IMG/VR virus record: IMGVR_UViG_3300032782_000001
Span: 372,001-436,000 of that record
Length of the DNA stretch: 64,000 nucleotides
Direction: 5' to 3' (one strand)
Part shown: positions 18,282-56,555 of the stretch, piece after piece
Position numbering within the stretch: the first letter of the stretch is position 1
How the letters are laid out: the number at the start of each line of letters is the position of its first letter
Position numbers and translations under genes: made by a program
Notes under the pieces: model-generated
What the model saw: the letters and a program-made list of their open reading frames with translations, nothing else
Database searches by the model: none
Told to the model about the DNA's origin: nothing

Positions 18282-18499
18282 CACGACCTCGACATGAAGC
18301 AGCTAAGACTCGACTCAATCTGCAGATTCCAGACGGCTTCCGGGAAACACTAGAAAATGTTCGAAAGAAAACCGACGCGGCCTCCATAACAGAGGTAATC
18401 ATTAAAGCAGTTCGGGTATATGAAGCAATAAGTAAGTCCAACGCCAGGTTGATACTGAGGTATCCTGACGGAATGGAAAAAGAAGTTTGGGTGATCTAA
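18278..18499 (+). CDS. Ribbon-helix-helix-like DNA-binding protein
   Basis: RLNLQIPD...LENVRKKTDAASITEVIIKAV pattern; ATGA overlap with the ligase-N stop. Confidence 0.6.
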   Translation: MTRPRHEAAKTRLNLQIPDGFRETLENVRKKTDAASITEVIIKAVRVYEAISKSNARLILRYPDGMEKEVWVI

Positions 18500-19014
18500 A
18501 GTTCGTAAATACCAATATACGGTAAATTTCGATATCTCTCATCGAAATCCAATCCATACCCAACAACAAAATGATCTTCAATAGTGAATCCGAGATAATC
18601 GATCGGAACCTCAACCTTCTTACGAGAAGGTTTGTGTAAGAGTGCGCAAACTGCAATGCTGGACGGATTCCTTGCTTGAAGCACTGATAAAAGATAATGA
18701 ATCGTAAGTCCAGTATCGATAATATCTTCTACCAACAAAATGTGCCTGCCTTCTATCGGTTTCACCAAATCGGCAGTGATCCGGACTTCTCCGGAAGATG
18801 AGAGAGAATTTCCGTATGAACTGGCTGCTAGAAAATCGATGGTCATGCTGGGAGAATCGATGGCTCGGACCAAATCAGCCAGAAAGATGAAAGAACCTTT
18901 CAAGACACCAATTACAGTCAAAAGTTGGCCGTCATAACGTTTCCGGATTTCTTCCCCAAGAGTGGAGACTCGGAGAGAAATATCGCTAGCAGAGAGAAGT
19001 TCCTGCATAGTCAA
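18496..19014 (-). CDS. hpt: Hypoxanthine-guanine phosphoribosyltransferase
   Basis: IGVLKGSFIFLADL, SSYG, LLVEDIIDTGLT (PRPP loop), FVVGYGLD...YRNLPYI. Confidence 0.95.
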   Translation of the reverse strand: MTMQELLSASDISLRVSTLGEEIRKRYDGQLLTVIGVLKGSFIFLADLVRAIDSPSMTIDFLAASSYGNSLSSSGEVRITADLVKPIEGRHILLVEDIIDTGLTIHYLLSVLQARNPSSIAVCALLHKPSRKKVEVPIDYLGFTIEDHFVVGYGLDFDERYRNLPYIGIYEL

Positions 19015-19768: not shown

Positions 19769-20083
19769 TCAAACGGTTGTGTAATTACCGGGAATATATA
19801 TTCCACTCACATGATCTCGCATGGCTTCAGCATGCTTGCGCCCTTCTTCAAGAACTTCCATCATGTCGGCATGGAAAGCTGCTTCGTCGAAGGCAACGTT
19901 ATGCTCTCGCCAATGACGATTGCACATAGATCTGAACATGTCTTTCTCCGCATCCCCTGATGGGTTGCAAATAGGACAATGGTCAGATGGAGGCTCGAAT
20001 GGCAATTCGAGCTGCACGGGAAGCGTGTCGTATCGCTTCATGAGCATCCAGATGAAGATCCGCATTGCATGCACAAATAACAA
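19769..20083 (-). CDS. Hypothetical protein with CPIC...C..H
   Basis: Follows nrdJ; putative Zn ligands. Start uncertain. Confidence 0.4.
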   Translation of the reverse strand: MLFVHAMRIFIWMLMKRYDTLPVQLELPFEPPSDHCPICNPSGDAEKDMFRSMCNRHWREHNVAFDEAAFHADMMEVLEEGRKHAEAMRDHVSGIYIPGNYTTV

Positions 20084-22857
20084 GTCCCGTTACGCCTTGT
20101 CATGGCTCCGCAAGAACCACACGGCGGTGCATCCAGATCCATAAGAGAAGGCCTGGAAACAGATTCCGGAGAACTATCGGGAGGAGATGACGATGGAGAA
20201 TCTGCTCCATTCATCAATTTATGATCCAATCCGGAGTTAGATCCACCGAAGTAACGCACGTCCAAAAGTTTGAACAAATAGTCATAGAGACTATCCGCGA
20301 ACCTGATGTTAGGATTGCTAGTGAATCCGGCAGGTTCGAATTTCGTGTGCACAAAGCTGCGAATGAGCTTTTCGAGAGGAACTCCGTATTGGAGTGCAAT
20401 ACTCATGAGTTGGGTGAATCCATCGATGAGTCCACCCATTGTCGAACCGTTCTTGCCGAGTTTGAGAAACACTTCACCTAGAGTCCCATCAGGGTACTCA
20501 CCCATAATGATATAACCCTTGTGACCACTGATCTCAAATCGATGCCTGTGAGCAGTAATATCCTCCGGCATATGCTTGCGACGCGCGATAGACGCATCTG
20601 ATTGAATAGCCTTGTTCTCATCCTTCTTGGTCGCGAGTGGTTGAGAAAGCTTGCATCCGTCGCGATACAAGGCAACGCATTTCAGTCCGAGCTTCCAGCT
20701 CTCAAGATAAATGTCAGCGATCTCCTGGGTTGTAACACTCCTCGGAAGATTAACTGTCTTACTTTGAGCGCAAGTGATGAGTGGCTGGATGGCAGCCATC
20801 ATCTTAATGTGCGCCATCGGTGACAAATACCTCCCCGATGGTCCCGACGGCATTGCGCAGTCAAAGACTGGAAGATCCCTATCTTTCAGATGAGGAGCTC
20901 CTTCAATATGTCCCTTCTCTTCGAGATGAGCGCAGATGGATTCCACTTGATCGTCCGTATATCCGAGCCTGACTAATGCTTCGGGGACTACTTCGTTGAC
21001 GAGCTTCATGAAACCGCCGCCCACGAGAGATTTGTAAGAGATAAGAGAGAATGCCGGTTCAATACCAGTCGTGTCCATCCCCATAAGGAAGGAAATGGTG
21101 CCGAGAGGGGCTTGCAGGGTGGCCTGTGAAACGTAGAAGCCGTATTTCGAACCGAGATCCATGACGTCGTTCCAAGCCTTGTGACTGTGCGCAACCACTT
21201 CGGCCCCCAGAGGGTCAGAACGAAGACTCGGCCGACGCAAAATATCGGCATTTGCCACATTATGCATTGCCATGACATGCATCATAGAATCTCGGTTCTT
21301 CTCGAATTCTTCAAACGGACCAACACGAGCAGCCAACTGAGCTGCCGTCTTGTAGACAACAGCAGTCATGAGACTAGCAAGACGAGCCGCTACAGCTCGG
21401 CCTTCGTCGGAATCGTACGAATATCCGAGCTTCATGAGAAGAGCTCCGAGGTTCCCATAATTCGTACCGATAGGTCGAAGCTTGAGAGAATTCTGACGGA
21501 TCTTCTCAGTCGGATAATCGGCCTTATCCACAATCGCCATCTGAGCGGTGCTGAAGACTCGAACAGCTTGTTCGAACCTATTGTAGTTGAAAGCCAATAT
21601 CCCCCGATCTTGATCGAAGAATTTCGTCAGATTGATTGCACATAGATTGCAGGCAGTATCATCCACATGCAAGAATTCTGAGCATGGGTTGGAGGAATTG
21701 ATCCGACCAGATTCCGGAGTGGTGTGCCATCGGTTGATATGATCAGTGAATTGAACGCCCGGATCCCCACAAGTCCAAGCTGCTTCAGCAATTTCATTCC
21801 AGAGATCACGAGCCCGATAGGATTTGACAATGCGACCGGTTAGACGCTCGTGAGTGTCCCACATTCCATCCATTACGACGGCCCGCATGAACTCGTCAGG
21901 AATTGATACGGAATGATTGGCATTCTGATATGACACCCATTTATAAGCCGAATTGGGATCATCGTAAGCAGCGCTATAGCCGCATTTCTCGATGAGATCG
22001 TGAGCCCTGCGCTCCTCGATGGCTTTGCAGCGGATGAAACCAGGTCGGCCATCTTGAGTTTCAAGAATATCCGGGTGGTTCATATCGAGAACCACCATCT
22101 TAGCTGCATTGCGGGTGGAACCACCAGACTTCATTGCCTTAGCACCCTTGTCGTGCTCTTCCATCCAGCCAAGCGGTCCACAAACGTAAGCCCCCGAAGA
22201 GAGCTTCTCATAAGAGGAACGGATCTTAGACAGGTTGGCTCCTGAACCGGAACCGCCAGCAAAAATGACCTTTTCTGATTGAGAAAAGGCATTGATCGAT
22301 TCGAGGGTATCTTCAACCCCCGAGATGAAACATGCGGATGCCGCTTGCCGACGCCCAGGAACCCCTAAGTTAAACCAGACAGGAGAATTGAACGCACCGT
22401 ATTGATGCAATAGGGAATAAAGCAGTTCTTCTTCAAAGACTACTGCGTCTTGATCTGAATTGAAGAATCCTTGGTCATCCGCCCAAAGACGAAGAGTAGA
22501 AGCAACACGACTGAAAAGTTGTTTGACGGAGTTTTCTTTTACCCCATCAATGTAGCGGAAATACTTGCTGGCAACCACGTCGATAGTGTTCTGGTTCCAC
22601 CAATCGGGTACTTCCACGTCTCGTTGTTGGAATTTGATATCTCCATTCGGTCCGCGAATTTCGGCGGTGGCAGTCTTCCATTGAATCTCTTCAAACGGAT
22701 GAATACCTTCGCTAGTGAATACCCTTTCCCACTTTCCGGAGGCCAAAGCATCAGCGTTTTTCGGATCTCGGGCGAGTGCAATGACGTTGCTCCTGTATGG
22801 AGTCTCAATCGCCAGGGTTCCGTTAGCGGCGACGCTTACCATTCTGTGCCTCCTCAC
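20038..22857 (-). CDS. nrdJ: Class II (adenosylcobalamin-dependent) ribonucleotide reductase
   Basis: FNSPVWFN, ASACFI, GGSTRNAAKM, NSSNPCSEF (thiyl Cys), ACNLCAIN, APLGTISF, QSKTVN, YRDGCK, C-terminal TSCPD-like domain and CGSC...CMQCG ribbon. Confidence 0.95.
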   Translation of the reverse strand: MRRHRMVSVAANGTLAIETPYRSNVIALARDPKNADALASGKWERVFTSEGIHPFEEIQWKTATAEIRGPNGDIKFQQRDVEVPDWWNQNTIDVVASKYFRYIDGVKENSVKQLFSRVASTLRLWADDQGFFNSDQDAVVFEEELLYSLLHQYGAFNSPVWFNLGVPGRRQAASACFISGVEDTLESINAFSQSEKVIFAGGSGSGANLSKIRSSYEKLSSGAYVCGPLGWMEEHDKGAKAMKSGGSTRNAAKMVVLDMNHPDILETQDGRPGFIRCKAIEERRAHDLIEKCGYSAAYDDPNSAYKWVSYQNANHSVSIPDEFMRAVVMDGMWDTHERLTGRIVKSYRARDLWNEIAEAAWTCGDPGVQFTDHINRWHTTPESGRINSSNPCSEFLHVDDTACNLCAINLTKFFDQDRGILAFNYNRFEQAVRVFSTAQMAIVDKADYPTEKIRQNSLKLRPIGTNYGNLGALLMKLGYSYDSDEGRAVAARLASLMTAVVYKTAAQLAARVGPFEEFEKNRDSMMHVMAMHNVANADILRRPSLRSDPLGAEVVAHSHKAWNDVMDLGSKYGFYVSQATLQAPLGTISFLMGMDTTGIEPAFSLISYKSLVGGGFMKLVNEVVPEALVRLGYTDDQVESICAHLEEKGHIEGAPHLKDRDLPVFDCAMPSGPSGRYLSPMAHIKMMAAIQPLITCAQSKTVNLPRSVTTQEIADIYLESWKLGLKCVALYRDGCKLSQPLATKKDENKAIQSDASIARRKHMPEDITAHRHRFEISGHKGYIIMGEYPDGTLGEVFLKLGKNGSTMGGLIDGFTQLMSIALQYGVPLEKLIRSFVHTKFEPAGFTSNPNIRFADSLYDYLFKLLDVRYFGGSNSGLDHKLMNGADSPSSSPPDSSPESVSRPSLMDLDAPPCGSCGAMTRRNGTCYLCMQCGSSSGCS

Positions 22858-23737
22858 TCAAACGAACGATTTCAGATTCCAACCCGTATCGCGCAAGCGT
22901 GTTCCCACGTTTGTGCATGATGTCCAAATCACACAAAGTGTTAAGGCTGGACATCAAAGACGCAGAAGCCCATAAACCGAGTCGCGGGAGCACCATTTTC
23001 TTATATAGGAAAGGGTGGATGCCAAGACGCTCGGCGACGTCGGGAACCTTCCCGTCGACTAAAGTCTGCAATCTGATCTGTTGCACTACGTGACGCTGCA
23101 TGTAGGCCAGAATCCATCCAGTTTCGTCCCCGTTCTCTTGGAGCTTGTCGTGGAATGCCAGAGCCCGGATGGTTTGACCTTCGCATATGGCGTCAATGAT
23201 CTGCTTGGGGGTTAACTCGGCGGAGAAGCACATCACGAGACGTGCCTTCTCAGGCAGAACCGTGCCACCCTTAGGGGTTATTACCGAAAGTTTCCTGATC
23301 TCCGATGAGATCTTTCGCAGACCGTTTCCGCAATTCACAAAAAGCGCACCCGCTACCCGGCTTAGATCTATGTTGAGAGCCTCTCCTTCCTTCAAAATCC
23401 ACTTGATGACATCATTATTATCATCGAATGTCTTAAGTTTTGGAAAATTGTGAACTCGGCGTGCACGCGAATCAGATAAAATCTTCTTTCCAGCAGAAAC
23501 AGCAATGACAACATCATTACCAGTGGGTATGTAAGGAATTTCTGAGACATCCCATAAAATGAAGGAGCGCGTTCCTCCATCTACCGTGGTCATTTGTACC
23601 TCTTCGAGGTACTCGTTAAGTCCTTTCGGGAGAGTATACTCAGCGGTGTGAGATGTCAGAGAAGCATGAGCTTCTTCTCTGGCTGCGCGTTCTTTTAAAA
23701 ACTCTTCCTCACCATTAATTAGGATCAACGACGCCAC
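22823..23737 (-). CDS. holA: DNA polymerase III delta subunit-like
   Basis: LILINGEEEFLKER, WILKEGEAL, GNGLRKISSEIRKL, QIIDAI...AL pattern; adjacent to holB. Confidence 0.8.
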   Translation of the reverse strand: MASLILINGEEEFLKERAAREEAHASLTSHTAEYTLPKGLNEYLEEVQMTTVDGGTRSFILWDVSEIPYIPTGNDVVIAVSAGKKILSDSRARRVHNFPKLKTFDDNNDVIKWILKEGEALNIDLSRVAGALFVNCGNGLRKISSEIRKLSVITPKGGTVLPEKARLVMCFSAELTPKQIIDAICEGQTIRALAFHDKLQENGDETGWILAYMQRHVVQQIRLQTLVDGKVPDVAERLGIHPFLYKKMVLPRLGLWASASLMSSLNTLCDLDIMHKRGNTLARYGLESEIVRLSEEAQNGKRRR

Positions 23738-23758
23738 GGGAAAATGACATTACACCTA

Positions 23759-24586
23759 TCAGTGGTGTCGATTCAGACAGGCTCTATACCAATGAATTTC
23801 TGCATTCAAAGAAGGATTTTTAAACAAATCAGAGGCCAAGCGGAGGAAATTTCGCATCATTGAAACAACGCCAGAATTGGAACGAAGTTCCGAGACTGCA
23901 ACGGAAATAGTATGACAAATAGCATCTCGCTCTACGGAGCGACCACTCTTAAGAGATGAAATCAACTCGGGAACAGGAATTTGTACTGGGTCCACCTGAC
24001 CTAGCATAATTTGCACACACAACTTGCAGAAACTATGATATCGTTGATCATTCAAAAATAAACCGTAGAAACCCGGGCGACCTCTCGACATCATAATTGC
24101 GTTATCATCTAGCCTATGCACAGTAGACGCATATTCATGCATCTCGGACTCGCTCAAGGGAGTCCATCTAATGATGTTTTCCAATCGATTCTGAAGCGCT
24201 GGTAATAAACATCCTTCATCTTCAAGGACCAAGAACACTCGACAATGAGCTGGAGGTTCTTCTAATAGTTTTAATAGTGCATCTTGCGCAGGTTCTGTTA
24301 GGAAATCTGCGTTATCTACCAAGACCGCTTTGAAAGGACTAAATAGAGGACCAGATTGTAGAAATTCTCTGGCTTCCCGGATTCCATCTACAGTAGTTTC
24401 TGCAACTGACAAATCGGTTTCAGAAACCGCGTCAGAGAGCAACCGTGATAAGTAGAGGTATTTACCTACGTGTGATGGTCCGGAAAGGACGACGACCCTA
24501 GCCGGAGTCCGATGATTTACCAGGAGGGAGACTTCGTGCCTCGCTAGGGAATTGCCGTAAATCTCTGTCTTTTCCTGATCCTCCAC
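23759..24586 (-). CDS. holB: DNA polymerase III delta-prime subunit-like
   Basis: LSGPSHVGK, VLVDNADFLTEPAQDALLKLLEEPP, LLPALQNR. Confidence 0.88.
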   Translation of the reverse strand: MEDQEKTEIYGNSLARHEVSLLVNHRTPARVVVLSGPSHVGKYLYLSRLLSDAVSETDLSVAETTVDGIREAREFLQSGPLFSPFKAVLVDNADFLTEPAQDALLKLLEEPPAHCRVFLVLEDEGCLLPALQNRLENIIRWTPLSESEMHEYASTVHRLDDNAIMMSRGRPGFYGLFLNDQRYHSFCKLCVQIMLGQVDPVQIPVPELISSLKSGRSVERDAICHTISVAVSELRSNSGVVSMMRNFLRLASDLFKNPSLNAEIHWYRACLNRHH

Positions 24587-29990: not shown

Positions 29991-30785
29991 GTGACTGCAA
30001 AGAATTCGAAAGCAAAAAGAACCGTTAGCGTAGCAGAGCGCGAGGAAGCGCTCAAGAAAGCCTTGGATGAGGCTACTCAACGCATGGCCACAGGCAAGAA
30101 GGAACGGGAGTATTTTCGACCCCTCTTGGAAGAATTGGTTCGCAATAATGCAATTCCTGTGGAGCTATTGCAGTTTGTTCCGGTTCGAGCCTCGGAAGCT
30201 GGTAAAACAAGGTTTGACCAGCTTTATGACGCGGCCATGTTGTTGGCATTCCCGGGGTATAGGAAGGAAACTCTTCAAAGGCTTTTAGCTCCTGGTGAAT
30301 CTGTAAAAACTGGCACGAAGATTTGGAGAGTGACATTTCCTGAGAAATTTGGTCTATCGCATGTGCTGATTCGAGCAGAATCTTTCCAAGAAGCTTTTGC
30401 TCTCGGCTGCGATTATGCTTGTCGAGTTTCATTACGAATGAACAAACGAATACCAGTCGATTTGACAGTCCGTGTCATGATTGTGACGGAAAGGGCTCTG
30501 CGCCGGAAACTCGATATGAGATGGGCGAATCGGGTACAAAGGCGTAAGCAACTTCAGCTCGAAGCTCGTATATATACTCCAAAAGAACTTGCTGGAGCCA
30601 GAATGGCTGCCATCGGACATCCGAAAGATCCGAAGAGAAGCTTGGCTAGATATGTAGAAGCAAAAGATCTGCAGAGTATTTTGAAATCAAAAGGACTCAC
30701 CAAGGTTTCGGCTGTTGAGGCAGAAATCCCGAAGAAAGAACTCGTCATTGATACCGGTCCAGGGATTCCAAAGATTCGTGGGTAA
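29991..30785 (+). CDS. Hypothetical basic protein upstream of purZ
   Basis: 264-aa ORF co-oriented with purZ. Confidence 0.65.
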   Translation: MTAKNSKAKRTVSVAEREEALKKALDEATQRMATGKKEREYFRPLLEELVRNNAIPVELLQFVPVRASEAGKTRFDQLYDAAMLLAFPGYRKETLQRLLAPGESVKTGTKIWRVTFPEKFGLSHVLIRAESFQEAFALGCDYACRVSLRMNKRIPVDLTVRVMIVTERALRRKLDMRWANRVQRRKQLQLEARIYTPKELAGARMAAIGHPKDPKRSLARYVEAKDLQSILKSKGLTKVSAVEAEIPKKELVIDTGPGIPKIRG

Positions 30786-30829: not shown

Positions 30830-32017
30830 ATGCAAGATGGGAAGCTCAATATTCTGCTGGATTGCTTCTGGGGTTCTAGCGGAAAGGGCAAAACGTCCGC
30901 CTTCTTGGCGGATAGATTCAACGTCACTCACGTCTCCAGCTCCAACTTCCCGAATGCTGGTCACACCGCTCTGTTTGAAGACGGAACGAAGTTCGTTGCA
31001 AAAGCCATCCCGACGGCTGCCATCCTCAAGAAAGTGAAAGGAATGGGGATGGAATGCTGGATTACTCCTGGTTCTGGATTCTCATGGGGCCAACTTTGTA
31101 AGGAATGGAAAGAAGCTGGATATCCCGAAATTCGAATCCATGAGCGTGCGAGCATCGTTACAGACGATCACGCTAAGCGGGAACGTGAAGGTGCGGATTC
31201 AACCATGCATATTGCATCCACAATGCAAGGTTCGGCCGCAGCCATCGTAGATAAAATCCTTCGACGAGCTGACTGCAAACTCGCTTGGAATGATCATGAA
31301 GAAATGAAGAGGCAGTTTAGTCATCTCTTCGAAAGCAAGACAGCACGATCCTCAGATTCAATTTCTGTGATCCGGGCGGACGAATTCCGCAAGTGCGTCC
31401 AGGAAACTGTGATGACAAGGGGCCACATGTGGCTCCACGAGGGATCGCAAGGTTATGCTCTCTCTATCGATCACGGATCGCACTATCCACAATGCACTTC
31501 ACGTAATTGCACTGTGCAAGCGGCGCTCGATCACCTCGCAATGCCGCCACGATCTCTGGGAGATGTTTACCTCAATTTGAGGACGTTCCCCATTCGAGTT
31601 GGAAACGTTATGGGAGATGACGGGCAACAGAAGGGGTACTCCGGTGACTTCTATCCGGACTGTGAAGAAATGACTTGGGAACAGGTCGCTTCTGAATCTG
31701 GAATGCCTGCCGAAGAAGCCAAAGCGCTTGCTGAAAGAGAACGTACGACTGTGACCAAGCGTATCCGTCGCGTTTGTACTTTTTCGTTCATCGGACTCCG
31801 AGACGCAGTCGTGACCAATGGAGCCACGAAGCTCGTTCTCAATTTCGTCCAATATCTAGATTGGAATGATCATGGATTGCGCGGCGGAAAAGAAGCCTTC
31901 GAGAAGCTCTCCAAGAAGAGCAGGAAATTCATCGATAAAATCGAAGCCACCACCAATGTTCCTGTAGTCCTCATCGGAACCGGTGCGGCACACGAAGACA
32001 TGATCAGTCTGTTATAA
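30830..32017 (+). CDS. purZ: PurZ-type adenylosuccinate synthetase homologue (N6-succino-2-amino-dAMP synthetase candidate)
   Basis: WGSSGKGK (Ser in place of the PurA catalytic Asp of GDEGKGK), FPNAGHT, IASTMQG, HEGSQGY, YPQCTSRN, RTFPIRVGN, ERTTVTKRIRRV, LNFVQY in place of TKLD. Confidence 0.8.
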   Translation: MQDGKLNILLDCFWGSSGKGKTSAFLADRFNVTHVSSSNFPNAGHTALFEDGTKFVAKAIPTAAILKKVKGMGMECWITPGSGFSWGQLCKEWKEAGYPEIRIHERASIVTDDHAKREREGADSTMHIASTMQGSAAAIVDKILRRADCKLAWNDHEEMKRQFSHLFESKTARSSDSISVIRADEFRKCVQETVMTRGHMWLHEGSQGYALSIDHGSHYPQCTSRNCTVQAALDHLAMPPRSLGDVYLNLRTFPIRVGNVMGDDGQQKGYSGDFYPDCEEMTWEQVASESGMPAEEAKALAERERTTVTKRIRRVCTFSFIGLRDAVVTNGATKLVLNFVQYLDWNDHGLRGGKEAFEKLSKKSRKFIDKIEATTNVPVVLIGTGAAHEDMISLL

Positions 32018-32523: not shown

Positions 32524-33099
32524 TTAATTTGCCGATCGAGGCTCTTCTTTTCGCTTACGCTTCAAGTGTATACCGATTTGATCTGGATTGGAAATCATAT
32601 ATTCATAACATGATTTGAAATATCCCTGGACAGGATGTGCTGCATCCTTGCGCATCAAGGCTTCCAAGACCAACATTCCGGATTTAGTGTCAGACCAAAT
32701 CCAGTCTTCGTCAATAGGTACGCCCGGAGATTGTTGGCTCCATACGTTCCCATAAGGAAACATGAGTAAGATGTATTCCATTTTGCTCAAATGAGGCCGG
32801 GGAAGCGGAACATAGCTTTCCTGACGTTTGATTGATAAGAATATCCCAGGAGGCAACACCAGACCGTTTGGAGTATTGGAAACCCACCTTTTGATGCTCA
32901 TCCATTTGACTTCAGGAGTCTTAATGTGCATCCGCTTCCGGCATGTCAGTGAACAATTGTAAAGCGCTGATGGAGACAGGCCACATAGCCAAGGGCGAAA
33001 ATCTGCGGGCACGCCCGTAAATGAGTGCAAGGATTTAATAGAAGGAATCTGGATAGTCGAAATCCGCCGTTGTACAATCGTTTTCACGTTCGAATCCAT
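32524..33099 (-). CDS. Hypothetical protein
   Basis: 191-aa ORF. Confidence 0.55.
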   Translation of the reverse strand: MDSNVKTIVQRRISTIQIPSIKSLHSFTGVPADFRPWLCGLSPSALYNCSLTCRKRMHIKTPEVKWMSIKRWVSNTPNGLVLPPGIFLSIKRQESYVPLPRPHLSKMEYILLMFPYGNVWSQQSPGVPIDEDWIWSDTKSGMLVLEALMRKDAAHPVQGYFKSCYEYMISNPDQIGIHLKRKRKEEPRSAN

Positions 33100-33114: not shown

Positions 33115-34452
33115 ATGTCCGAACAACAGACCGAGATCTTCTGCCTTACGGACCATACGGGTGCTCCATTGAGCCCCGCGAAACAAGCGACTGTACTTGC
33201 GAAATATTCACGGTCTCCGGAGTCTGCCAAAGAACTCTTGGCCAAACTTTCGGCCGAAGAAGCGGATAAATTCCAGGAAAAGTGGGTTGTGAGTTATGGC
33301 CATAAGAGTGTGGCAGAACTCGCTACCGCGCCTGTATGCCTCGAGCGAATTTCTATCGTGGCATCCAAATTCTTCGAATCTTGGCAAAGGCCTGGATACT
33401 CGGAAAAGAGTACAAGGTACCAGGCTTTCTCTCGAGATTCCTTCGTCACGCCGCCTGGTGGCCCTGAGACCATGGCAAAATTCGCCGCCAGGTTCTACGA
33501 TGCATACGATCGTCTCAATGAGAGAATGACGGCACGATGCGCCAAACTCATGAATCTGCCAGAGTCCGACAGGACTGTGAAGGCTAGAGCGTTTGATAAC
33601 CTCAGGTACCTGTTGCCTGCTGGAACTGGAACGAACGTCGCTATTGTCGCCAACATGTGCGACTTGCGAGAAATGATCGTCAGGGCTCGGGGCCACAACA
33701 ATTCTGAATTCCGTCTCATCGGGGACAAAATCCACGATGCAGTAGGAGAAGTTGCCCCCACTTTAGTAAAACATACTGAACCGGATGCTTTCGAACCAGT
33801 CGTAAAAGGACTCGGGAACATTAGCCCGAAATTCAGTTTTGAAGCTCCGGATTGGTACGTGGACCTCCACAAGCCATTCTTGCTGCCCGATCCTGCGTTG
33901 ACTCAAAAGTCATTTGAATCGACAATCGCAGATCGGCACGGAATGAGTTGGTCAGCGTTCTGCAAGCACATGGACTCTCGCCCAGAACACCGACACGTAC
34001 CCAAAGTCTTCCGATCCATTCGGATCGCTTTTGACATTATGATGGACTACGGCGCATACCGAGATCTACAAAGGCATCGGCGTTGTGAGCAATATGCAGA
34101 GCCATTGTCTATTCACTACGGGTATTTAGTGCCAGATGACATTCTCGGATCCGATCTTGAGAATGAATATCGAGAAGCTATGGAGGCTATTTGGGCATAT
34201 GACGACGATTCTGTCGTTCACGACGCAGACTTTATGCAGTATATGATTCCCCTTGGCTATCTGCATAGGTCCGTATTTGATATGGACCTGGAGCAACTCT
34301 ACTATATTTCAGAACTCCGAACCAAGCCGCAAGGCCATATTTCGTATAGGCGAGTAGCTTACGAAATGTATCGGCTCGGTAAAGAGAGGTTCCCGCAAGC
34401 CATGCAGTGGTGTCGAGCTATTTTACCGGCTTCAATCGGGAAGCATACTTGA
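33115..34452 (+). CDS. thyX: FAD-dependent thymidylate synthase-like protein (tandem ThyX domains)
   Basis: SYGHKSVAELA, YSEKSTRY, ARAFDNLRYLLP, and second-domain YRDLQRHRR and ELRTKPQGHISYR. Confidence 0.8.
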   Translation: MSEQQTEIFCLTDHTGAPLSPAKQATVLAKYSRSPESAKELLAKLSAEEADKFQEKWVVSYGHKSVAELATAPVCLERISIVASKFFESWQRPGYSEKSTRYQAFSRDSFVTPPGGPETMAKFAARFYDAYDRLNERMTARCAKLMNLPESDRTVKARAFDNLRYLLPAGTGTNVAIVANMCDLREMIVRARGHNNSEFRLIGDKIHDAVGEVAPTLVKHTEPDAFEPVVKGLGNISPKFSFEAPDWYVDLHKPFLLPDPALTQKSFESTIADRHGMSWSAFCKHMDSRPEHRHVPKVFRSIRIAFDIMMDYGAYRDLQRHRRCEQYAEPLSIHYGYLVPDDILGSDLENEYREAMEAIWAYDDDSVVHDADFMQYMIPLGYLHRSVFDMDLEQLYYISELRTKPQGHISYRRVAYEMYRLGKERFPQAMQWCRAILPASIGKHT

Positions 34453-36028: not shown

Positions 36029-36053
36029 TTCAATATCTTGCGTATCGCAAGAT

Positions 36054-36680: not shown

Positions 36681-36703
36681 TGTAACGTCGGAGCGGAGGC
36701 TCC

Positions 36704-37315
36704 ATGGACGTTTATCTCGTTAGTTCTCGAAGGCTCGATTGTGCACACCAGAATGTCTACGAGACGAAAGTCGTCTGTGGGAATTTGGAATCAGCCCGTC
36801 GGGCTGCTAAGAGTCTGTGTAGCGATCTCGACGGGTTATTCAACGAAACAGTTAAGAACGTCGAGTGGGAATATGACGTTGGAGGTGATCATCCGGTCAG
36901 AGTAACCAAGACGATGCTTAACGGTCATTGTGATCTCGGTATTGAAGAACTTTGCGCAATTTCTTCTCAGATCGCTTTGGAGCATGGGTGGAAGAATGAT
37001 TTCCCCACTCAGTCACTTTTAACTGTAACTGAAATTGCAGAAGCTGTTGAGGAATTCCGTGATCATCGGGGACTGAACGAGATCTGGTACAGCCACACCG
37101 TCAAGTCCAATAACGGAAAGACGAAGACTATTTCGGAAGTCTCGGCGGATACACCAGGAGCAAAACCCGAAGGTATCCCTGTAGAACTTGGAGATGCCAT
37201 TATTCGGATTTGTGATTGGTGTGGACAAAACGCCATTGATCTCCTGACTGCAATTCGCATCAAGGTCGAGTATAATCGGACCCGACCTTTCAGGCACGGG
37301 GGTAAGGCCATTTAG
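36704..37315 (+). CDS. MazG-like NTP pyrophosphohydrolase with an N-terminal extension
   Basis: LTVTEIAEAVEEFR...GIPVELGDAIIRICD...IKVEYNRTRPFRHGGK. Confidence 0.8.
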   Translation: MDVYLVSSRRLDCAHQNVYETKVVCGNLESARRAAKSLCSDLDGLFNETVKNVEWEYDVGGDHPVRVTKTMLNGHCDLGIEELCAISSQIALEHGWKNDFPTQSLLTVTEIAEAVEEFRDHRGLNEIWYSHTVKSNNGKTKTISEVSADTPGAKPEGIPVELGDAIIRICDWCGQNAIDLLTAIRIKVEYNRTRPFRHGGKAI

Positions 37316-37500
37316 TGAGTCTAACATTTTCTTCGTTAGAGGCGGAAATTCTCCATAGCTTGATCATGGGGATCAAGCGAATGGAGCGCCACAGCCCTGC
37401 AACCATTGGTGGCAGCGGATGGTGTACTCTTGAAATCGGATTCCGTGAAACTCGGATAAGAGCCCCGCAAGGGAATGATGACTCAAGAAAAAACTACTAA
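37315..37500 (+). CDS. Small hypothetical protein
   Basis: GTG start overlapping the previous stop; 61 aa. Confidence 0.4.
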   Translation: MSLTFSSLEAEILHSLIMGIKRMERHSPATIGGSGWCTLEIGFRETRIRAPQGNDDSRKNY

Positions 37501-37508
37501 ATCAAGGT

Positions 37509-40053: not shown

Positions 40054-40063
40054 AGATTGAGTC

Positions 40064-41409: not shown

Positions 41410-41976
41410 TCATCGGTGGAAACCGAATAAATCCACGATTTCATCCCATCCGACTACTCGACGAAGATGGGATTCTCGGCGATTATATGGAGTGTCCCAA
41501 AGCAATGCGTGGCCGTTAGGATGATGTAAACCCCATTTCTCCACGTTGTCCGGTTTATCATCGACTAGTCCATGGCCTGCGACCGCATATTTCCGGAAAC
41601 AGTGAATGATTTCGTCCTGACGAGCATTAAAATGATGAGATAACCATTCATTGCGTTCCTGCATCCATGTTTTACTAATATGGTGTGGAGTAGTAACAAA
41701 TAATATCTCCACATCTGGAATAGAGCGGAGCTTTTCTACGGCTTTTTGAGCCTCAGGAAAAGGCTTCAAAGAAGAAGCGAATCCGGGCTCCGCAATCCCG
41801 TTATTACAAGCGGCCTTCATTTCGGCAGTGGGAAGAACATCAGTCACATCCCAGGTAGTGAATGCACTCATTTCCAATCGGATTCCAAAGAGATCATTGA
41901 TGAGATCTCGGGCTGCCTCGTGGAAGTCACCTAAAACTCCATCGACATCCAACAAGAGACGCCTATGTAAACTCAT
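41410..41976 (-). CDS. HAD-family 5'(3')-deoxyribonucleotidase
   Basis: LLLDVDGVLGDF, FVTTP, RNEWLSHHF, LVDDKPDN, LLWDTPYNR; start at ATG 41976. Confidence 0.88.
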   Translation of the reverse strand: MSLHRRLLLDVDGVLGDFHEAARDLINDLFGIRLEMSAFTTWDVTDVLPTAEMKAACNNGIAEPGFASSLKPFPEAQKAVEKLRSIPDVEILFVTTPHHISKTWMQERNEWLSHHFNARQDEIIHCFRKYAVAGHGLVDDKPDNVEKWGLHHPNGHALLWDTPYNRRESHLRRVVGWDEIVDLFGFHR

Positions 41977-42491
41977 GACGACATTACGACTTCGACGCAG
42001 CAAGAGCGCCATAGTTCAACAAGATCTTCCAATTCCATGTCTTTGGCTGGACCAATCAGTGCGGTTCTGATCATTTCTACCCCTCTAGCATGCTCTTCAG
42101 ATCGACGCCTGGTTGCCCGTTTCTCGATGAGGACCATGGCTTTCCCATAAAGCCCATTGGTGGGTGCTTCTTGGATCGCTTTGTCAGAGCGTTCTCTGAT
42201 TTCCGCCAGAAGCTTATCCATGGCGGCTCTCACGGATTTGGGTTTCAGGACAAAACGTTTGAATCGAGGATTGTACTGATGAATGATCTTCAGTTCAAGC
42301 TCCCTATCTGAATAGGAACAAGATACCCATTTCATTTTCGGGAGTCCGACGTCCAAAAGAACGGATGTGTGATAGAATTGGGAAAGATCTTGATTCGCTT
42401 GAATGTTGTTCGGAGGAACAAAGCGTACGCGTGCTAAAATAATCTTCGTTTGGGATAGCTTCTGAATCAGGAATTCGGCAGTTTTTGCCAT
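41973..42491 (-). CDS. Hypothetical protein ending in EVVMSS
   Basis: 172 aa; ATGTAT 9 nt upstream; variant of the shared C-terminal motif. Confidence 0.65.
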   Translation of the reverse strand: MAKTAEFLIQKLSQTKIILARVRFVPPNNIQANQDLSQFYHTSVLLDVGLPKMKWVSCSYSDRELELKIIHQYNPRFKRFVLKPKSVRAAMDKLLAEIRERSDKAIQEAPTNGLYGKAMVLIEKRATRRRSEEHARGVEMIRTALIGPAKDMELEDLVELWRSCCVEVVMSS

Positions 42492-42527
42492 CTCAGATCA
42501 ATACATTCCTGGTACCGTGGAGATACG

Positions 42528-45783: not shown

Positions 45784-45986
45784 TCTTCAGGCTCATCCCC
45801 CACCGGAACAGTGGAGTCACACCATTCACAATGACCCAAACCGTTAGCTTGACGTAAAACACGATGGCCTTTCCCAAAAGCAATCTCATCCAATTTCTTG
45901 AAAATAAGTTCGTCTTCAGCCGATTTAATTTGTTCTCGCGCAGATATAACTGCCGCAGAATGTATAGGCAAAGGTTGACGTGCCAT
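45744..45986 (-). CDS. Hypothetical protein ending in WEVMES
   Basis: 80 aa; CEWC...C; shared C-terminal motif. Confidence 0.55.
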   Translation of the reverse strand: MARQPLPIHSAAVISAREQIKSAEDELIFKKLDEIAFGKGHRVLRQANGLGHCEWCDSTVPVGDEPEECPMNIIWEVMES

Positions 45987-46957
45987 GCGAGACTGTACGG
46001 TCGGTCGTGCGTCACCACATCTTCTGTTTCAGTGGGTACTCGGGCGTCGGCAAAGATGAATGCGCCGGGCATCTCGTTCGAACGAGACAGGCAATTCACA
46101 CTGGGCTTGCAGACCCTGCCAAACGCCATATGGCAGATCTCTACGGATTCACCAAAGAACAGCTCTTCGGACCGAGTCATTTTCGCAATGCAGGCGATCC
46201 GAGATATCCGAAGAATGTTATTCGAAATCTCGGATTCCAATACTTTGATGGTCAAGTAGAGTTGCGAGATGTTGTAGGAGAACTTCGTGATGGCAAACGC
46301 TATATCATCGTAGAAACAAGAAATCTCCCTGGAACAGAACCAGTTCCAGGGAAGCCAGGTTGGCCGGCTGTTCCGCGGCAACCTCTCCAACTCGGGAAAG
46401 CTCGATACTTCATCGAAAACGATCATCCGAATTTCTTCTTGTCGCCTCGTGAGGCGCTGCAACTCTACTGCAATCTCATGAACGATCTCTATCTCGATTC
46501 ATGGATTCGCAAGGGTATTGAAGTTCATCAACAACTTGCCGAAATCCATCAGCAAGATGGAAAGGAAGTCTTCATGCGTCATAGTTACGATCGCATGATG
46601 GGCGTAATCGTGAATGACGTGCGGGAAGGTACCAATTGGAAAACGTCAGATGGGAACTTCTTTACATGCTTTTCTGATTTCCGCCACCGACACGAAATCT
46701 CCCTCGTCAGAGCGTTCAAAGCTGAGTATACTCCAGTCGTGATTCGCGTGAAGCACCCGAAGATTACAATGCCCCCATACGATCATCGTTCAGAGACGGA
46801 ACAAGCTAGTATTCCGGATTCTGCATTCGACTTCGTCATCGATAATGACGGGAGTCTCCAAGAGCTCTACACAAAGGTCGAGAAGATCGTAGAAACGGTC
46901 ATTGCATCTGACGGTTGGAGGCTTCGAGGGCGGAGCTTATATGAGGAGGCCTCGTGA
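45980..46957 (+). CDS. Deoxynucleoside monophosphate kinase-like
   Basis: FSGYSGVGKD, GLADPAK, PREALQ, SDFRHRHE, HRSE, FDFVIDNDGSLQELY. Confidence 0.85.
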   Translation: MPCETVRSVVRHHIFCFSGYSGVGKDECAGHLVRTRQAIHTGLADPAKRHMADLYGFTKEQLFGPSHFRNAGDPRYPKNVIRNLGFQYFDGQVELRDVVGELRDGKRYIIVETRNLPGTEPVPGKPGWPAVPRQPLQLGKARYFIENDHPNFFLSPREALQLYCNLMNDLYLDSWIRKGIEVHQQLAEIHQQDGKEVFMRHSYDRMMGVIVNDVREGTNWKTSDGNFFTCFSDFRHRHEISLVRAFKAEYTPVVIRVKHPKITMPPYDHRSETEQASIPDSAFDFVIDNDGSLQELYTKVEKIVETVIASDGWRLRGRSLYEEAS

Positions 46958-48000
46958 CGATTGATATTGAGAAACTCAAGGCAGTCACCGACATTTATTG
47001 CCATGCATCATGCCCGGACGGCCTATCATCGGCAATGCTTTGTGCAGCAGCATTTTCAATGCTCGGGAGCAAGCCGAAGATTTGGTTCATCCAGTATGGA
47101 ACCGAGAAGATGCTGAAGATGGAGGCCAGACCAAACCAGCTCTTCGTCGACATCACGCCTCCTCTCGAGCGATGGGAAGAATGGAAGGAACACTCACCCA
47201 TTGTTCTTGACCATCACAAGACTGCTCGGAAGGCCACGGAAGGACTCGGAGGCATTTACGGGACCGAGACCCAATCCGGAGCTTCACTGGCTTACGAACA
47301 TGTCTTTGAACCATTGTTCAAAGACGACTTTAGTGAGAGTGAGTACGCTGATTGGAAAAACCTCGCCGAGCTCGCACCCATTCGGGATACCTGGCAAGAT
47401 TCACATGAGCGCTGGGTTGAAGCTACTGGAATGGCTCACGCGCTCATGCAGAATAACCCTTATGAACTCGTGGATGCGGCCCGTGAAGGGAAAGTAGACT
47501 TCCAAGAGCTCTTCAAGCAGGCGAAGCGCGAAGGAGATCGGATTGATTTCAAGGCCAGAAAATTGGCCGAAAACGCTTATTTCGATCAGATCCAGTGTCT
47601 CGGAGTGAATTACCTTCTCGGGGTATTTAATTGCACTGAGAAGCTCATCTCGGATGCTGCGAACACGCTCCTAAGGCATGGGTGCGACATCGCTGTTGCC
47701 TATTTCATGCTTTGTGAAGACGGAGGTCCGAAGATTTCAATCTCCATCCGAACCAATGGAGAGATTTCAGCAGAAATCTTAGCCGCTCATAACAAGGGCG
47801 GAGGACATGACAAAGCTGCGGGCTTCAGGATTGACGATGGTCTGAATGCCTCAGTCAAGTCAATTGTTCAAGTCATCAAGCAGTCTGTCTGGAATACTAA
47901 AACCCAAAGTGTGAAGCCTGATGACGGACGAGAGCGTAAAACCAAAGACATGGTTTTGCAATCTTTGCAAGAGGCTAAGCCAGGTAAGAAACGGAGCTAA
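46954..48000 (+). CDS. DHH/DHHA1 phosphoesterase
   Basis: YCHASCPDG, FVDIT, VLDHHKT, SGASLAY, ISIR, GGGHDKAAG. Confidence 0.88.
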   Translation: MTIDIEKLKAVTDIYCHASCPDGLSSAMLCAAAFSMLGSKPKIWFIQYGTEKMLKMEARPNQLFVDITPPLERWEEWKEHSPIVLDHHKTARKATEGLGGIYGTETQSGASLAYEHVFEPLFKDDFSESEYADWKNLAELAPIRDTWQDSHERWVEATGMAHALMQNNPYELVDAAREGKVDFQELFKQAKREGDRIDFKARKLAENAYFDQIQCLGVNYLLGVFNCTEKLISDAANTLLRHGCDIAVAYFMLCEDGGPKISISIRTNGEISAEILAAHNKGGGHDKAAGFRIDDGLNASVKSIVQVIKQSVWNTKTQSVKPDDGRERKTKDMVLQSLQEAKPGKKRS

Positions 48001-56455: not shown

Positions 56456-56555
56456 TCAACCAAGTACACCCCCGATTGGAGAATTTAGGACTCCATGACA
56501 GATCGCACGCGCATAAACTACGAACCGGAAGCCTTCATCGGCTGTACCTTGCCAC

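What the first reader, a model, noticed from the sequence alone, without database searches (positions are those of the whole stretch)
30830..32017. PurZ-type enzyme: candidate 2-aminoadenine (Z) genome in a jumbo-type phage with a Pol III-like replisome
Seen: three substitutions relative to PurA. GSSGKGK replaces GDEGKGK (catalytic Asp13 to Ser). ERTTVTKR has Thr at the E. coli Gly298 position. LNFVQY replaces the GTP-specifying TKLD. Known (from recall of the S-2L and PhiVC8-type work): these changes mark PurZ, which uses dGMP and (d)ATP to start dZTP synthesis. Arg303 is retained here, whereas some PurZ have Leu. Inference: this phage may replace A with Z wholly or partly, using a polymerase class and host range not typical of described Z phages.
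Basis: partly seen in the sequence, partly recalled or inferred. Interest (0 to 1): 0.92.

Follow-up and report, generated by a model that had tools for sequence, protein, structure and literature searches.

The report
PurZ-type enzyme in a huge phage
A gene that databases label as an ordinary adenine-synthesis enzyme in a 436-kb phage genome is really the PurZ type that starts synthesis of 2-aminoadenine (Z), so a whole group of giant phages may build Z into their DNA, with helper genes arranged differently from those of the small Z phages known so far.

Summary
ORF 30830-32017(+) encodes a 395-aa adenylosuccinate-synthetase homolog with GSSGKGK, TTVT and NFVQY at the stated positions.

It is PurZ, not PurA or PurZ0:
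- All cellular PurA sequences compared have Asp, G[AT][TV]T and T[KGC][LV]D at these three sites.
- The dGMP and ATP contact residues of the S-2L and phiVC8 PurZ crystal structures are conserved.
- A maximum-likelihood tree places the protein inside the ATP-type PurZ radiation, outside PurZ0 and archaeal and bacterial PurA.

It represents a large lineage, mostly unnamed or labelled "adenylosuccinate synthase" in public data. Seventeen of the 80 IMG/VR loci fetched lie on contigs of at least 200 kb.

The canonical datZ/mazZ/dpoZ cluster lies beside purZ in 27-30 of 40 more distant loci, almost all on contigs under 70 kb. It is absent from all 24 contigs of at least 150 kb.

This window instead carries a MazZ homolog 4.7 kb downstream, plus HGPRT, NrdJ, tandem ThyX, an NT5C nucleotidase, a dNMP kinase and a DHH phosphoesterase. 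In relatives, purZ is directly followed by dUTPase-like or YfbR/HD-type genes.

Z in the virion DNA, a dATP-clearing enzyme and the polymerase remain unverified. No polymerase gene was found in about 83 kb examined.

The parts
30830..32017 (+). purZ-type gene: predicted N6-succino-2-amino-2'-deoxyadenylate synthase (dGMP + Asp + ATP/dATP)
   Evidence: Has Ser at the Asp13 site, the TTVT loop and the NF.QY adenine pocket. Lies inside the PurZ radiation in the tree. AF2 model pLDDT 96.3; best Foldseek match is 6FM1, phiVC8 PurZ.
36704..37315 (+). MazG-type all-alpha NTP pyrophosphatase, homolog of MazZ, with a ~95-aa N-terminal extension and a ~30-aa insert
   Evidence: PHROG 3301 'pyrophosphatase' E 1.3e-26. 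hhalign against the MazZ family: probability 98.7%, E 3.9e-16. Detection is reciprocal between the two HMMs. It keeps the E..E..EE and E..D metal ligands and an Asp at the position of S-2L D60. The same gene lies near purZ in relative L174, and in L175/L176 among the same neighbour genes, though their fetched stretches hold no purZ.
33115..34452 (+). 445-aa tandem (two-domain) ThyX-type thymidylate synthase, conserved next to purZ
   Evidence: Pfam Thy1 E 2.4e-32 with 2 stretches. PHROG 36506. Present beside purZ in 15 related loci.
29991..30785 (+). conserved 264-aa ORF directly upstream of purZ on the same strand; function unknown
   Evidence: Present in 15 related loci with 39 invariant columns. 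No family hit. AF2 pLDDT 67.6 and no fold match.
32524..33099 (-). conserved 191-aa ORF between purZ and thyX; function unknown
   Evidence: Present in 15 related loci. No family hit.
41410..42012 (-). NT5C-family 5'-deoxyribonucleotidase; candidate dNMP-clearing enzyme (inferred)
   Evidence: Pfam NT5C E 1.9e-21. PHROG 2643. Present in relatives L174-L176 and in 3 IMG/VR loci.
45980..46957 (+). T4 gp1-like deoxynucleoside monophosphate kinase
   Evidence: Pfam DNMK E 5.7e-08, 33.1 bits against a cutoff of 27.1. PHROG 139 E 4.3e-22. Within 10 kb of purZ in 13 related loci.
46954..48000 (+). DHH/DHHA1 phosphoesterase, overlapping the end of the kinase gene by 4 nt
   Evidence: Pfam DHHA1 E 1.5e-08. 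PHROG 4771 E 1.6e-21.
20038..22857 (-). class II (B12-dependent) ribonucleotide reductase NrdJ
   Evidence: NF005122, 1099.8 bits against a cutoff of 859.
18496..19014 (-). hypoxanthine(-guanine) phosphoribosyltransferase
   Evidence: TIGR01203, 211.5 bits against a cutoff of 150. Pfam Pribosyltran E 1.7e-24.
22823..24586 (-). two bacterial-type clamp-loader subunit genes (delta-like 22823-23737, delta-prime-like 23759-24586)
   Evidence: Precomputed Pfam hits DNA_pol3_delta_C (weak) and DNA_pol3_delta2. Conserved next to purZ in 13 related loci.

Best explanation
The ORF encodes a PurZ-type enzyme. It is an adenylosuccinate-synthetase homolog that condenses dGMP with aspartate, using ATP or dATP instead of GTP, to give N6-succino-2-amino-2'-deoxyadenylate. 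Adenylosuccinate lyase, a (d)NMP kinase and a nucleoside-diphosphate kinase then convert this to dZTP, and the phage DNA contains 2-aminoadenine in place of at least part of its adenine.

Shown: membership in the PurZ lineage, conservation of the substrate-contact residues, and conservation of the gene in a large lineage of phages, many on contigs of 150-445 kb.

Inferred supply side: HGPRT and NrdJ raise the guanine deoxynucleotide pool. The MazZ homolog at 36704-37315 turns dGTP (and possibly dATP) into the monophosphate. The phage dNMP kinase may phosphorylate dZMP.

Inferred exclusion side: PurZ itself may consume dATP, as S-2L PurZ does. The MazG-type enzyme together with the NT5C nucleotidase may drain dATP and dAMP, or a DatZ-like gene lies in the roughly 350 kb of the genome that I could not read.
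For: Family assignment:
- NCBIfam PurZ is the best model (198 bits), ahead of archaeal-type PurA (167) and purA (122).
- PDB phmmer ranks phiVC8 PurZ (1e-32) and S-2L PurZ (1.8e-30) above archaeal PurA (2.2e-23), PurZ0 7VF6 (7.8e-14) and E. coli PurA (2.8e-12).

Residues:
- Of the S-2L PurZ ligand-contact residues listed in PMC8342488, these are identical here: S16, N42-T46, S130-T131, R145, Q207, C222-T223, R256-V257, T306-T309, R313, N338, F339 and Q341. Y21 is conservatively replaced by W14 (backbone contact). The loop insertion after the conserved Val is also present.
- Seven of the 12 residues I mapped from those that a restriction-resistance screen of dZ DNA ranked or discussed as separating PurZ from PurA (bioRxiv 10.1101/2025.10.22.683976) are identical: S14, T262, F295, Y298, W252, Y244 and P233 in VpPurZ numbering.

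Phylogeny:
- Careful IQ-TREE gives bacterial PurA | archaeal PurA (100/96) | PurZ0 (100/100) | PurZ radiation (98/85, 100/98), with the window lineage inside the last group (99/91) (quick tree of 85 rows).

Conservation and linkage:
- More than 100 protein clusters at 63-77% identity. Seventeen IMG/VR loci lie on contigs of at least 200 kb.
- Functional linkage within the lineage: a MazZ homolog near purZ here and in relative L174, and in the same gene neighbourhood in L175/L176. dUTPase-family genes lie immediately downstream in L017, L018, L120, L127 and L134. A YfbR/HD-type hydrolase lies immediately downstream in L107 and L108. These are the same enzyme classes as MazZ, DutZ and DatZ of proven Z phages (PMC12884076).
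Against: - No DatZ, DUF550, DutZ, DmtZ or DpoZ homolog is in the 64-kb window or in about 19 kb further along the contig.
- None lies within 10 kb of purZ in any of 24 contigs of at least 150 kb.
- The score is below NCBIfam's PurZ cutoff (198 against 300).
- Identity to characterised PurZ is only 28-36%.
- The fold does not separate PurZ from archaeal PurA.
- P336 of S-2L, which stacks on adenine, is Ala here.
- Arg is retained at the E. coli R303 position, which in PurA touches the 2'-OH of IMP. The same Arg also occurs in the PurZ-type proteins of phages BCSR129 and ZP6.
- There are no biochemical or DNA-composition data.
Confidence: 0.68

Rival explanations
1. The enzyme is a true PurZ, but the phage DNA is only partly or conditionally substituted, or dZ nucleotides and dATP consumption serve mainly to perturb host pools, because no dedicated dATP-clearing system exists in these huge phages.
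For: DatZ and DpoZ are absent near purZ in all 24 contigs of at least 150 kb, and absent from about 83 kb of this genome. The literature states that complete replacement needs both dZTP synthesis and dATP degradation (PMC8342488; PMC12697855, discussion).
Against: About 350 kb of the genome is unread. Relatives in the same PurZ lineage carry HD-type or dUTPase-type hydrolases directly after purZ. This genome has a MazZ homolog and an NT5C nucleotidase. S-2L PurZ itself uses dATP as phosphate donor (PMC8342488).
Confidence: 0.2
2. The protein acts on a different purine nucleotide (for example GMP, dIMP or dXMP), so its product is not a precursor of Z-DNA.
For: Identity to characterised PurZ is only 28-36%. 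Arg is retained at the PurA R303 position. The loop after V257 is longer than in S-2L or phiVC8 PurZ.
Against: The base-pocket residues (S16, N42, A43, T131, Q207, V257) and the TTVT loop are those of dGMP-bound PurZ. V257 is invariant and an insertion follows it, as in S-2L where this disfavours a 2'-OH (PMC8342488). The genomic linkage is to dNTP and dNMP enzymes, not to ribonucleotide enzymes.
Confidence: 0.08
3. It is an ordinary PurA-type auxiliary metabolic gene that boosts AMP synthesis, as public annotations say ('adenylosuccinate synthase').
For: The Pfam family is PF00709. Of the homologs that carry a name, JGI and NCBI call them adenylosuccinate synthase or synthetase.
Against: The catalytic Asp13 is Ser, whereas Asp13 is conserved in 99% of PurA (PMC12884076). 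The guanine-specifying Asp333 is Gln. All 14 cellular PurA sequences compared keep both residues. The tree excludes the protein from PurA with 100/100 support.
Confidence: 0.02

Closest known systems
PurZ (DgsS) of Vibrio phage phiVC8 (PDB 6FM1, 6FKO) and PurZ of cyanophage S-2L (PDB 7ODX)
   Same: Same fold (Foldseek E 2.6e-29, TMt 0.86). Ser at the Asp13 site, the TTVT loop, the N-F-x-[QN]-Y adenine pocket, and the conserved Val followed by a loop insertion. Same branch of the tree.
   Different: Only 27-31% identity. A longer insert (residues ~258-303). A C-terminal ~50 residues that resemble archaeal PurA. Ala instead of the stacking Pro336. The gene is not embedded in a datZ-mazZ-purZ-dpoZ cluster. 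The genome is about ten times larger.
Z-cluster of small siphoviruses and podoviruses (purZ with mazZ/DUF550, datZ, dpoZ), e.g. Burkholderia phage BCSR129, the best GenBank phage match at 36%
   Same: purZ plus a MazG-type pyrophosphatase homologous to MazZ.
   Different: In BCSR129, mazZ and datZ follow purZ directly. Here the MazZ homolog is 4.7 kb away. No datZ or dpoZ was found. The neighbours are thyX, NrdJ, clamp-loader genes, a dNMP kinase and NT5C.
PurZ0 of Arthrobacter, Gordonia and Streptomyces phages (PDB 7VF6), with DutZ and DmtZ
   Same: Ser at the Asp13 site and the TTVT loop. Relatives of the window gene (Sorangium, L120, L134) are followed by a dUTPase-family gene, as PurZ0 is by dutZ.
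   Different: PurZ0 keeps a GTP-type [TS]M.D motif, while the window protein has NFVQY. PurZ0 is a separate clade with 100/100 support. PDB phmmer E is 7.8e-14, against 1e-32 for PurZ.
Archaeal PurA (Pyrococcus horikoshii, PDB 5K7X, 2D7U)
   Same: Short-form architecture. The C-terminal region aligns (residues 291-392). TM-scores are as high as for PurZ.
   Different: Archaeal PurA has GDEGKGK, GTVT and T[GC][LV]D, and forms a separate clade (100/96).

Membership tests
PurZ (ATP-dependent 2-aminodeoxyadenylosuccinate synthase) | Adenylosuccinate-synthetase homology and fold | tested here: met
   Pfam PF00709 E 1.7e-31. AF2 pLDDT 96.3. Foldseek top hits are PurZ and PurA at E 1e-28 to 1e-29.
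PurZ (ATP-dependent 2-aminodeoxyadenylosuccinate synthase) | [quoted passage not shown] | tested here: met
   S16. Ser in 40 of 40 lineage representatives that have a residue at this site, and Asp in all 10 cellular PurA tallied.
PurZ (ATP-dependent 2-aminodeoxyadenylosuccinate synthase) | Thr at VpPurZ T262 / S-2L T273 (E. coli Gly298) in a TTVT loop tip | tested here: met
   T306-T307-V308-T309. Thr in 42 of 42 lineage sequences, Gly in cellular PurA.
PurZ (ATP-dependent 2-aminodeoxyadenylosuccinate synthase) | Loss of the (N/T)KxD guanine motif and gain of the adenine pocket N-F-x-[QN]-Y (VpPurZ F295, N297, Y298; S-2L N305, F306, Q308) | tested here: met
   N338, F339, Q341, Y342. The stacking Pro336 is Ala386 here.
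PurZ (ATP-dependent 2-aminodeoxyadenylosuccinate synthase) | Conserved Val (S-2L V241) followed by a loop insertion that disfavours a ribose 2'-OH | tested here: inconclusive
   V257 is invariant and an even longer insertion follows it. The geometry relative to a bound nucleotide was not modelled.
PurZ (ATP-dependent 2-aminodeoxyadenylosuccinate synthase) | Phylogenetic placement with characterised PurZ, apart from PurZ0 and PurA | tested here: met
   Careful IQ-TREE, 52 rows: the PurZ radiation has support 98/85 and 100/98 and holds S-2L, phiVC8-like and Acinetobacter phage PurZ as well as the window lineage. A quick tree of 85 rows agrees.
PurZ (ATP-dependent 2-aminodeoxyadenylosuccinate synthase) | Score above the curated NCBIfam NF038379 cutoff | tested here: not met
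   198 bits against a cutoff of 300. It is still the best-scoring model. This threshold belongs to one curated model and is not a biochemical criterion, but it would explain why pipelines name the gene PurA.
PurZ (ATP-dependent 2-aminodeoxyadenylosuccinate synthase) | Activity: dGMP + Asp + ATP/dATP gives dSMP | not testable with these tools
   Needs an enzyme assay.
Z-genome system (ZTGC DNA) | dGTP/dATP pyrophosphatase that supplies dGMP (MazZ, DUF550 or DutZ) | tested here: met
   ORF 36704-37315 is homologous to MazZ (hhalign 98.7%; PHROG 3301). Its substrate specificity is untested.
Z-genome system (ZTGC DNA) | dATP or dAMP removal enzyme (DatZ HD hydrolase, DutZ with DmtZ) | tested here: not met
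   None in the window plus about 19 kb. About 350 kb of the genome was not readable, so absence from the genome is not shown. Relatives L107 and L108 have a YfbR/HD-type gene directly after purZ.
Z-genome system (ZTGC DNA) | Z-selective polymerase DpoZ (PolA); known not to be universal, since S-2L uses a PrimPol | tested here: not met
   No DpoZ homolog in the window or within 10 kb of purZ in any contig of at least 150 kb.
Z-genome system (ZTGC DNA) | 2-aminoadenine present in virion DNA | not testable with these tools
   Sequencing reads Z as A. Needs LC-MS, restriction resistance or raw-signal analysis.
PurA (adenylosuccinate synthetase, IMP + GTP) | Asp13 general base and the (N/T)KxD guanine-binding Asp333 | tested here: not met
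   S16 and Q341 at those positions.
PurZ0 (GTP-dependent) | Retained guanine-pocket Asp ([TS]M.D) and membership of the PurZ0 clade | tested here: not met
   NFVQY instead. PurZ0 is a separate clade with 100/100 support.

The most novel reading that the evidence does not exclude
A whole lineage of phages, including many of about 150-450 kb, has genomes largely or fully substituted with 2-aminoadenine. They would make it with a dispersed, non-canonical enzyme set: a PurZ of a distinct sublineage; a MazZ homolog with an extra N-terminal domain; an NT5C-type nucleotidase or another so far unrecognised enzyme in place of DatZ; and their own dNMP kinase, HGPRT and NrdJ. They would replicate it with a clamp-loader-based, non-PolA replisome. 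This would be the first case of Z-DNA in huge phages.
Probability: 0.3. Interest if true: 0.85.

Novelty: new variant of a known kind. Interest (0 to 1): 0.65.

Why it matters
Z-DNA phages described so far fall into seven groups (PMC12884076). All 176 PurZ-family matches among 50,697 GenBank phage records were below 60% identity to this protein, and only one listed record (168 kb, 26.5% identity) exceeded 100 kb.

If this lineage is functional, three things follow:
- 2-aminoadenine chemistry extends to the largest known phages.
- Z-DNA can then be replicated without DpoZ and perhaps without DatZ.
- These genomes offer new candidate enzymes for controlling dATP and dZTP pools, which are useful for engineering ZTGC DNA.

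There is also an annotation gap. The curated PurZ model's cutoff misses the lineage, and the homologs that carry a name are called adenylosuccinate synthase or synthetase, never PurZ. Surveys of Z phages that rely on that model or on the datZ/mazZ neighbourhood would overlook them.

I found no paper in the searchable library that links PurZ or 2-aminoadenine with jumbo or huge phages.

Tried and rejected
- Megablast of 24 kb around the gene against GenBank phages found no match.
It was repeated with 8 sequences.
- phmmer with S-2L, Vibrio phage H1 and BCSR129 DatZ, MazZ, DpoZ and two other cluster proteins against all window ORFs gave no hit. Only an iterated HMM found the MazZ homolog.
- Pfam and NCBIfam do not recognise the MazG-like ORF, and PDB sequence search found nothing for it.
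- Profile comparison of seven conserved unknown neighbours (g29991, g32524, g35144, g28302, g25251, g48024, g32266) with the DatZ, MazZ and two other Z-cluster families was all negative.
- The structure prediction of g29991 was low-confidence (pLDDT 67.6) and had no fold match.
- Walking about 19 kb beyond the left edge of the window found FEN, a sigma factor and large unknown, probably structural, proteins. There was no polymerase and no nucleotide enzyme.
- Conserved neighbours of the second huge-phage subclade (41-45% identity) gave only Rad50-like and AP-endonuclease hits.
- The YfbR/HD-type protein of L108 has no close relative on any purZ-bearing huge contig.
- Fold comparison cannot tell PurZ from archaeal PurA.
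- The PurA-type auxiliary-gene reading and the PurZ0 reading were rejected on residues and on the tree.
- A prophage or host junction as the cause of the GC jump at 56 kb was rejected, because two independent assemblies carry the same sequence.
Full report
**The observation.** ORF 30830-32017(+) is a 395-aa open reading frame with an ATG start and a GGAGG 13 nt upstream. It contains WGSSGKGK, ERTTVTKRIRR and LNFVQY. In alignments with E. coli PurA (mature numbering), S16 aligns with Asp13, T306 with Gly298, R311 with Arg303, and N338-F339-V340-Q341 with T330-K331-L332-D333. Homology to adenylosuccinate synthetases is beyond chance: Pfam E 1.7e-31, and PHROG 1211 (annotated as the PurZ family) E 5e-54.

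**Which member of the superfamily.**
- The best NCBIfam model is PurZ (198 bits), ahead of archaeal-type PurA (167) and bacterial purA (122). The score is below PurZ's curated cutoff of 300.
- Against PDB sequences the order is phiVC8 PurZ (1e-32), S-2L PurZ (1.8e-30), Pyrococcus PurA (2.2e-23), PurZ0 7VF6 (7.8e-14), then E. coli PurA (2.8e-12).
- I aligned 158 sequences. These included characterised or annotated PurZ (Vibrio phage H1, which is phiVC8-like; S-2L; Alteromonas ZP6; Acinetobacter DMU1), PurZ0 (Arthrobacter Aledel, Gordonia Archimedes, Streptomyces Galactica), E. coli PurA, and archaeal and bacterial PurA recovered from GTDB genomes.
- The three motif states co-vary without exception. 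All 14 cellular PurA have GD.GK, G[AT][TV]T and T[KGC][LV]D. PurZ0 has GSEAKG, TTVT and [TS]M.D. Known PurZ and the window lineage have GS[STC]GKG, TTVT and NF..Y.
- Most ligand-contact residues described for the S-2L PurZ crystal structure (PMC8342488) are identical in the window protein: S16, N42-A43-G44-H45-T46, S130-T131, R145, Q207, C222-T223, R256-V257, T306-T309, R313, N338, F339 and Q341. Y21 is conservatively replaced by W14. The loop insertion after the conserved Val, which in S-2L pushes that Val toward C2', is also present. The exceptions are G130 (Ala here), Y203 (Gln), R244 (Val) and P336 (Ala).
- A restriction-enzyme enrichment study of dZ DNA ranked or discussed residues that separate PurZ from PurA (bioRxiv 10.1101/2025.10.22.683976). 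I mapped 12 of them, and seven are identical here: S14, T262, F295, Y298, W252, Y244 and P233 in VpPurZ numbering.
- A careful maximum-likelihood tree of 52 rows reproduces the published topology: bacterial PurA | archaeal PurA (100/96) | PurZ0 (100/100) | PurZ radiation (98/85 and 100/98). The window protein sits in an 18-row lineage (99/91) inside the PurZ radiation. A quick tree of 85 rows agrees.
- An AlphaFold model from 73 sequences is confident (pLDDT 96.3). Its best Foldseek match is phiVC8 PurZ 6FM1 (E 2.6e-29), but Pyrococcus PurA matches almost as well. The fold alone therefore does not discriminate.

**Where the gene sits.**
- The exact protein is encoded on a 436,316-bp JGI contig, which IMG/VR lists as UViG_3300032782_000001, on a 337,333-bp ENA contig, and on a 73-kb Logan contig. 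The window covers roughly the last 64 kb of the JGI contig.
- The protein collection holds 2,829 homologs. More than 100 clusters share 63-77% identity, several of them on contigs of 200-445 kb. Most carry no name; those that do are called 'adenylosuccinate synthase' or 'synthetase'.
- Of the 80 best IMG/VR loci, 24 lie on contigs of at least 150 kb and 17 on contigs of at least 200 kb.
- GenBank phage records hold nothing closer than 36% identity.
- In the closest relatives the neighbourhood is syntenic: NrdJ, clamp-loader delta and delta-prime, a sigma-like gene, g29991, purZ, g32524, tandem thyX, g35144, then a dNMP kinase and a DHH phosphoesterase.

**Accessory enzymes.**
- I built iterated HMMs for DatZ, MazZ, DpoZ and two other Z-cluster families from S-2L, Vibrio phage H1 and Burkholderia phage BCSR129.
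- Within 10 kb of purZ, DatZ, MazZ and DpoZ are found in 30, 27 and 27 of the 40 loci whose PurZ is at most 40% identical to the window's; 39 of these 40 are on contigs under 70 kb. They are found in 0, 1 and 0 of the 40 loci with at least 41% identity, and in 0, 1 and 0 of the 24 contigs of at least 150 kb.
- The single MazZ hit is the window's own ORF 36704-37315. It matches PHROG 3301 'pyrophosphatase' (E 1.3e-26). Its family aligns with the MazZ family at hhalign probability 98.7%, E 3.9e-16, and detection is reciprocal.
- This ORF keeps the acidic metal ligands and an Asp at the position of S-2L D60, the residue that reads guanine's 2-amino group (PMC8342488). It also has a ~95-aa N-terminal extension and a ~30-aa insert.
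- The same gene lies 3.9 kb downstream of purZ in the closest relative, L174. In L175 and L176 it sits among the same neighbour genes (DUF488, C1 peptidase, NT5C, dNMP kinase, DHH), although the fetched stretches of those two contigs contain no purZ.
- The window also encodes HGPRT (TIGR01203, 211 bits), class II RNR, an NT5C 5'-deoxynucleotidase, a T4 gp1-like dNMP kinase, and a DHH phosphoesterase.
- Elsewhere in the same PurZ lineage, purZ is directly followed by a dUTPase-family gene, which in L134 also carries a DUF1599 'nucleotide modification associated' domain. This is seen in the Sorangium So ce131 and Chondromyces apiculatus chromosomes and in viral contigs L120, L127 and L134.
- In L107 and L108, purZ is directly followed by a YfbR/HD-type hydrolase with the H..HD..E..D..D pattern.
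- These are the enzyme classes that serve as DutZ and DatZ in proven Z phages (PMC12884076). The recurrent linkage supports a Z-pathway role for the lineage.

**What is missing.**
- No DatZ-type or other recognisable dATP-clearing enzyme, and no DNA polymerase of any family, is present in the window or in the ~19 kb further left that I could read by walking.
- The 'Pol III-like replisome' rests only on bacterial-type clamp-loader subunits, a Toprim primase-like gene, a RecD2-type helicase, an NAD ligase and a FEN.
- The host is unknown. Close relatives are binned with Lentisphaeria and Methylobacter MAGs, which is weak evidence.

**Most likely mechanism.**
- Shown: the gene is a member of the ATP-type PurZ lineage with an intact active site, conserved across many huge-phage genomes.
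- Inferred: HGPRT and NrdJ feed guanine deoxynucleotides. The MazZ homolog yields dGMP. PurZ makes dSMP. Host PurB, a kinase (host Gmk or the phage dNMP kinase) and Ndk give dZTP.
- Inferred: dATP is lowered by PurZ's own use of dATP (shown for S-2L only), by the pyrophosphatase together with the NT5C nucleotidase, or by an enzyme elsewhere in the genome. There is a precedent for an NT5C-fold nucleotidase excluding a canonical nucleotide: the dTMP phosphatase of the jumbo phage PBS1 (PMC12697855).
- I put 0.68 on the enzyme being a functional PurZ that puts Z into the DNA. Full replacement is less certain, at about 0.3-0.4.

**Novelty.** The enzyme family and pathway are known. What is new is a large, overlooked PurZ lineage that includes many huge phages, and a locus architecture without the canonical datZ-mazZ-dpoZ neighbourhood. 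Searches of the paper library for PurZ, 2-aminoadenine or diaminopurine together with jumbo, huge or mega phages found no report of this. I rate it a new variant of a known kind, with interest 0.65.

Noticed in passing
window 56000-64000 (repeat units 58429-62549): GC rises from about 0.48 to 0.58-0.66. At least 9 copies of a ~54-nt intergenic unit precede a string of 60-115-aa ORFs, with 3-4 inverted copies for the divergent genes after about 61.8 kb. Read in the gene direction, each unit is [TC]G[TC]AA[AG]TCC, ~16 nt, CGTATTC, ~6 nt, GGAGGTGAC, ~7 nt, ATG. This looks like a reiterated promoter plus a strong Shine-Dalgarno sequence. The same sequence is present in the JGI and ENA assemblies, so it is not a chimera.
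   Followed up: partly
window 59363-59436 (-) and 62421-62470: A tRNA-Lys(UUU) gene sits inside the high-GC small-ORF block. A perfect 50-bp palindrome (25 + 25 nt, no spacer) lies at 62421-62470 (I17).
   Followed up: no
homologs P0121, P0122, P0123, P0129, P0134, P0139, P0143, P0144, P0149, P0151: PurZ-lineage proteins of 747-1197 aa carry one or two inserts of 330-415 aa. Several junctions are intein-like (Cys at the start, HN followed by C, T or S at the end), for example at NAGH|T and before CTSR. These are probably inteins sitting in catalytic motifs.
   Followed up: partly
L017 8001-9871 (Sorangium sp. So ce131 chromosome, near 9.77 Mb); L018 (Chondromyces apiculatus DSM 436): Myxobacterial chromosomes carry a PurZ-type gene (46-47% identity, GSSGK[AG]K / TTVT / NF..Y) at host-like GC (0.685). 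A 253-aa dUTPase-family gene overlaps its end by 4 nt. None of the 9 other flanking ORFs has a Pfam hit. It could be a prophage remnant or a cellular use of the pathway.
   Followed up: partly
window 33115-34452 (+): The ThyX is 445 aa long with two Thy1-like halves. The N-terminal half has WQR where RHR is expected, and the C-terminal half keeps QRHRR. It is conserved next to purZ in 15 related loci.
   Followed up: partly
window 36000-42500: None of the 41 related IMG/VR loci with at least 40% PurZ identity has, within 10 kb of purZ, a homolog of this block's DUF488 gene, MazG-like gene, 263-aa ORF, papain-like C1 peptidase or two DUF4082-like ORFs; NT5C appears in only 3. In 13 of those loci the dNMP kinase lies within 10 kb of purZ. 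Most of the block does recur in L174-L176, so it looks like a variable insertion.
   Followed up: partly
window 50427-51239 (-) and 49938-50336 (-); L175/L176 2152-2535: A microbial PARG-like (macro-domain-type) gene lies next to a single-domain response-regulator gene. Relatives also carry a ribosomal protein L7/L12-like gene beside the PARG-like gene.
   Followed up: no
window 30830-32017; NCBIfam NF038379: The curated PurZ model scores this lineage at 198 bits against a cutoff of 300. The homologs that carry a name in JGI or NCBI are called adenylosuccinate synthase or synthetase, never PurZ.
   Followed up: yes
L013 283-1626 (Flavobacterium phage MaF61, 167.8 kb): A 447-aa 'adenosuccinate synthetase' lies between the scaffold and terminase genes. 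It also has the PurZ signature (FGSSGKGK, TTLT, NFVNY), with a large insert and a very long branch in the tree.
   Followed up: no
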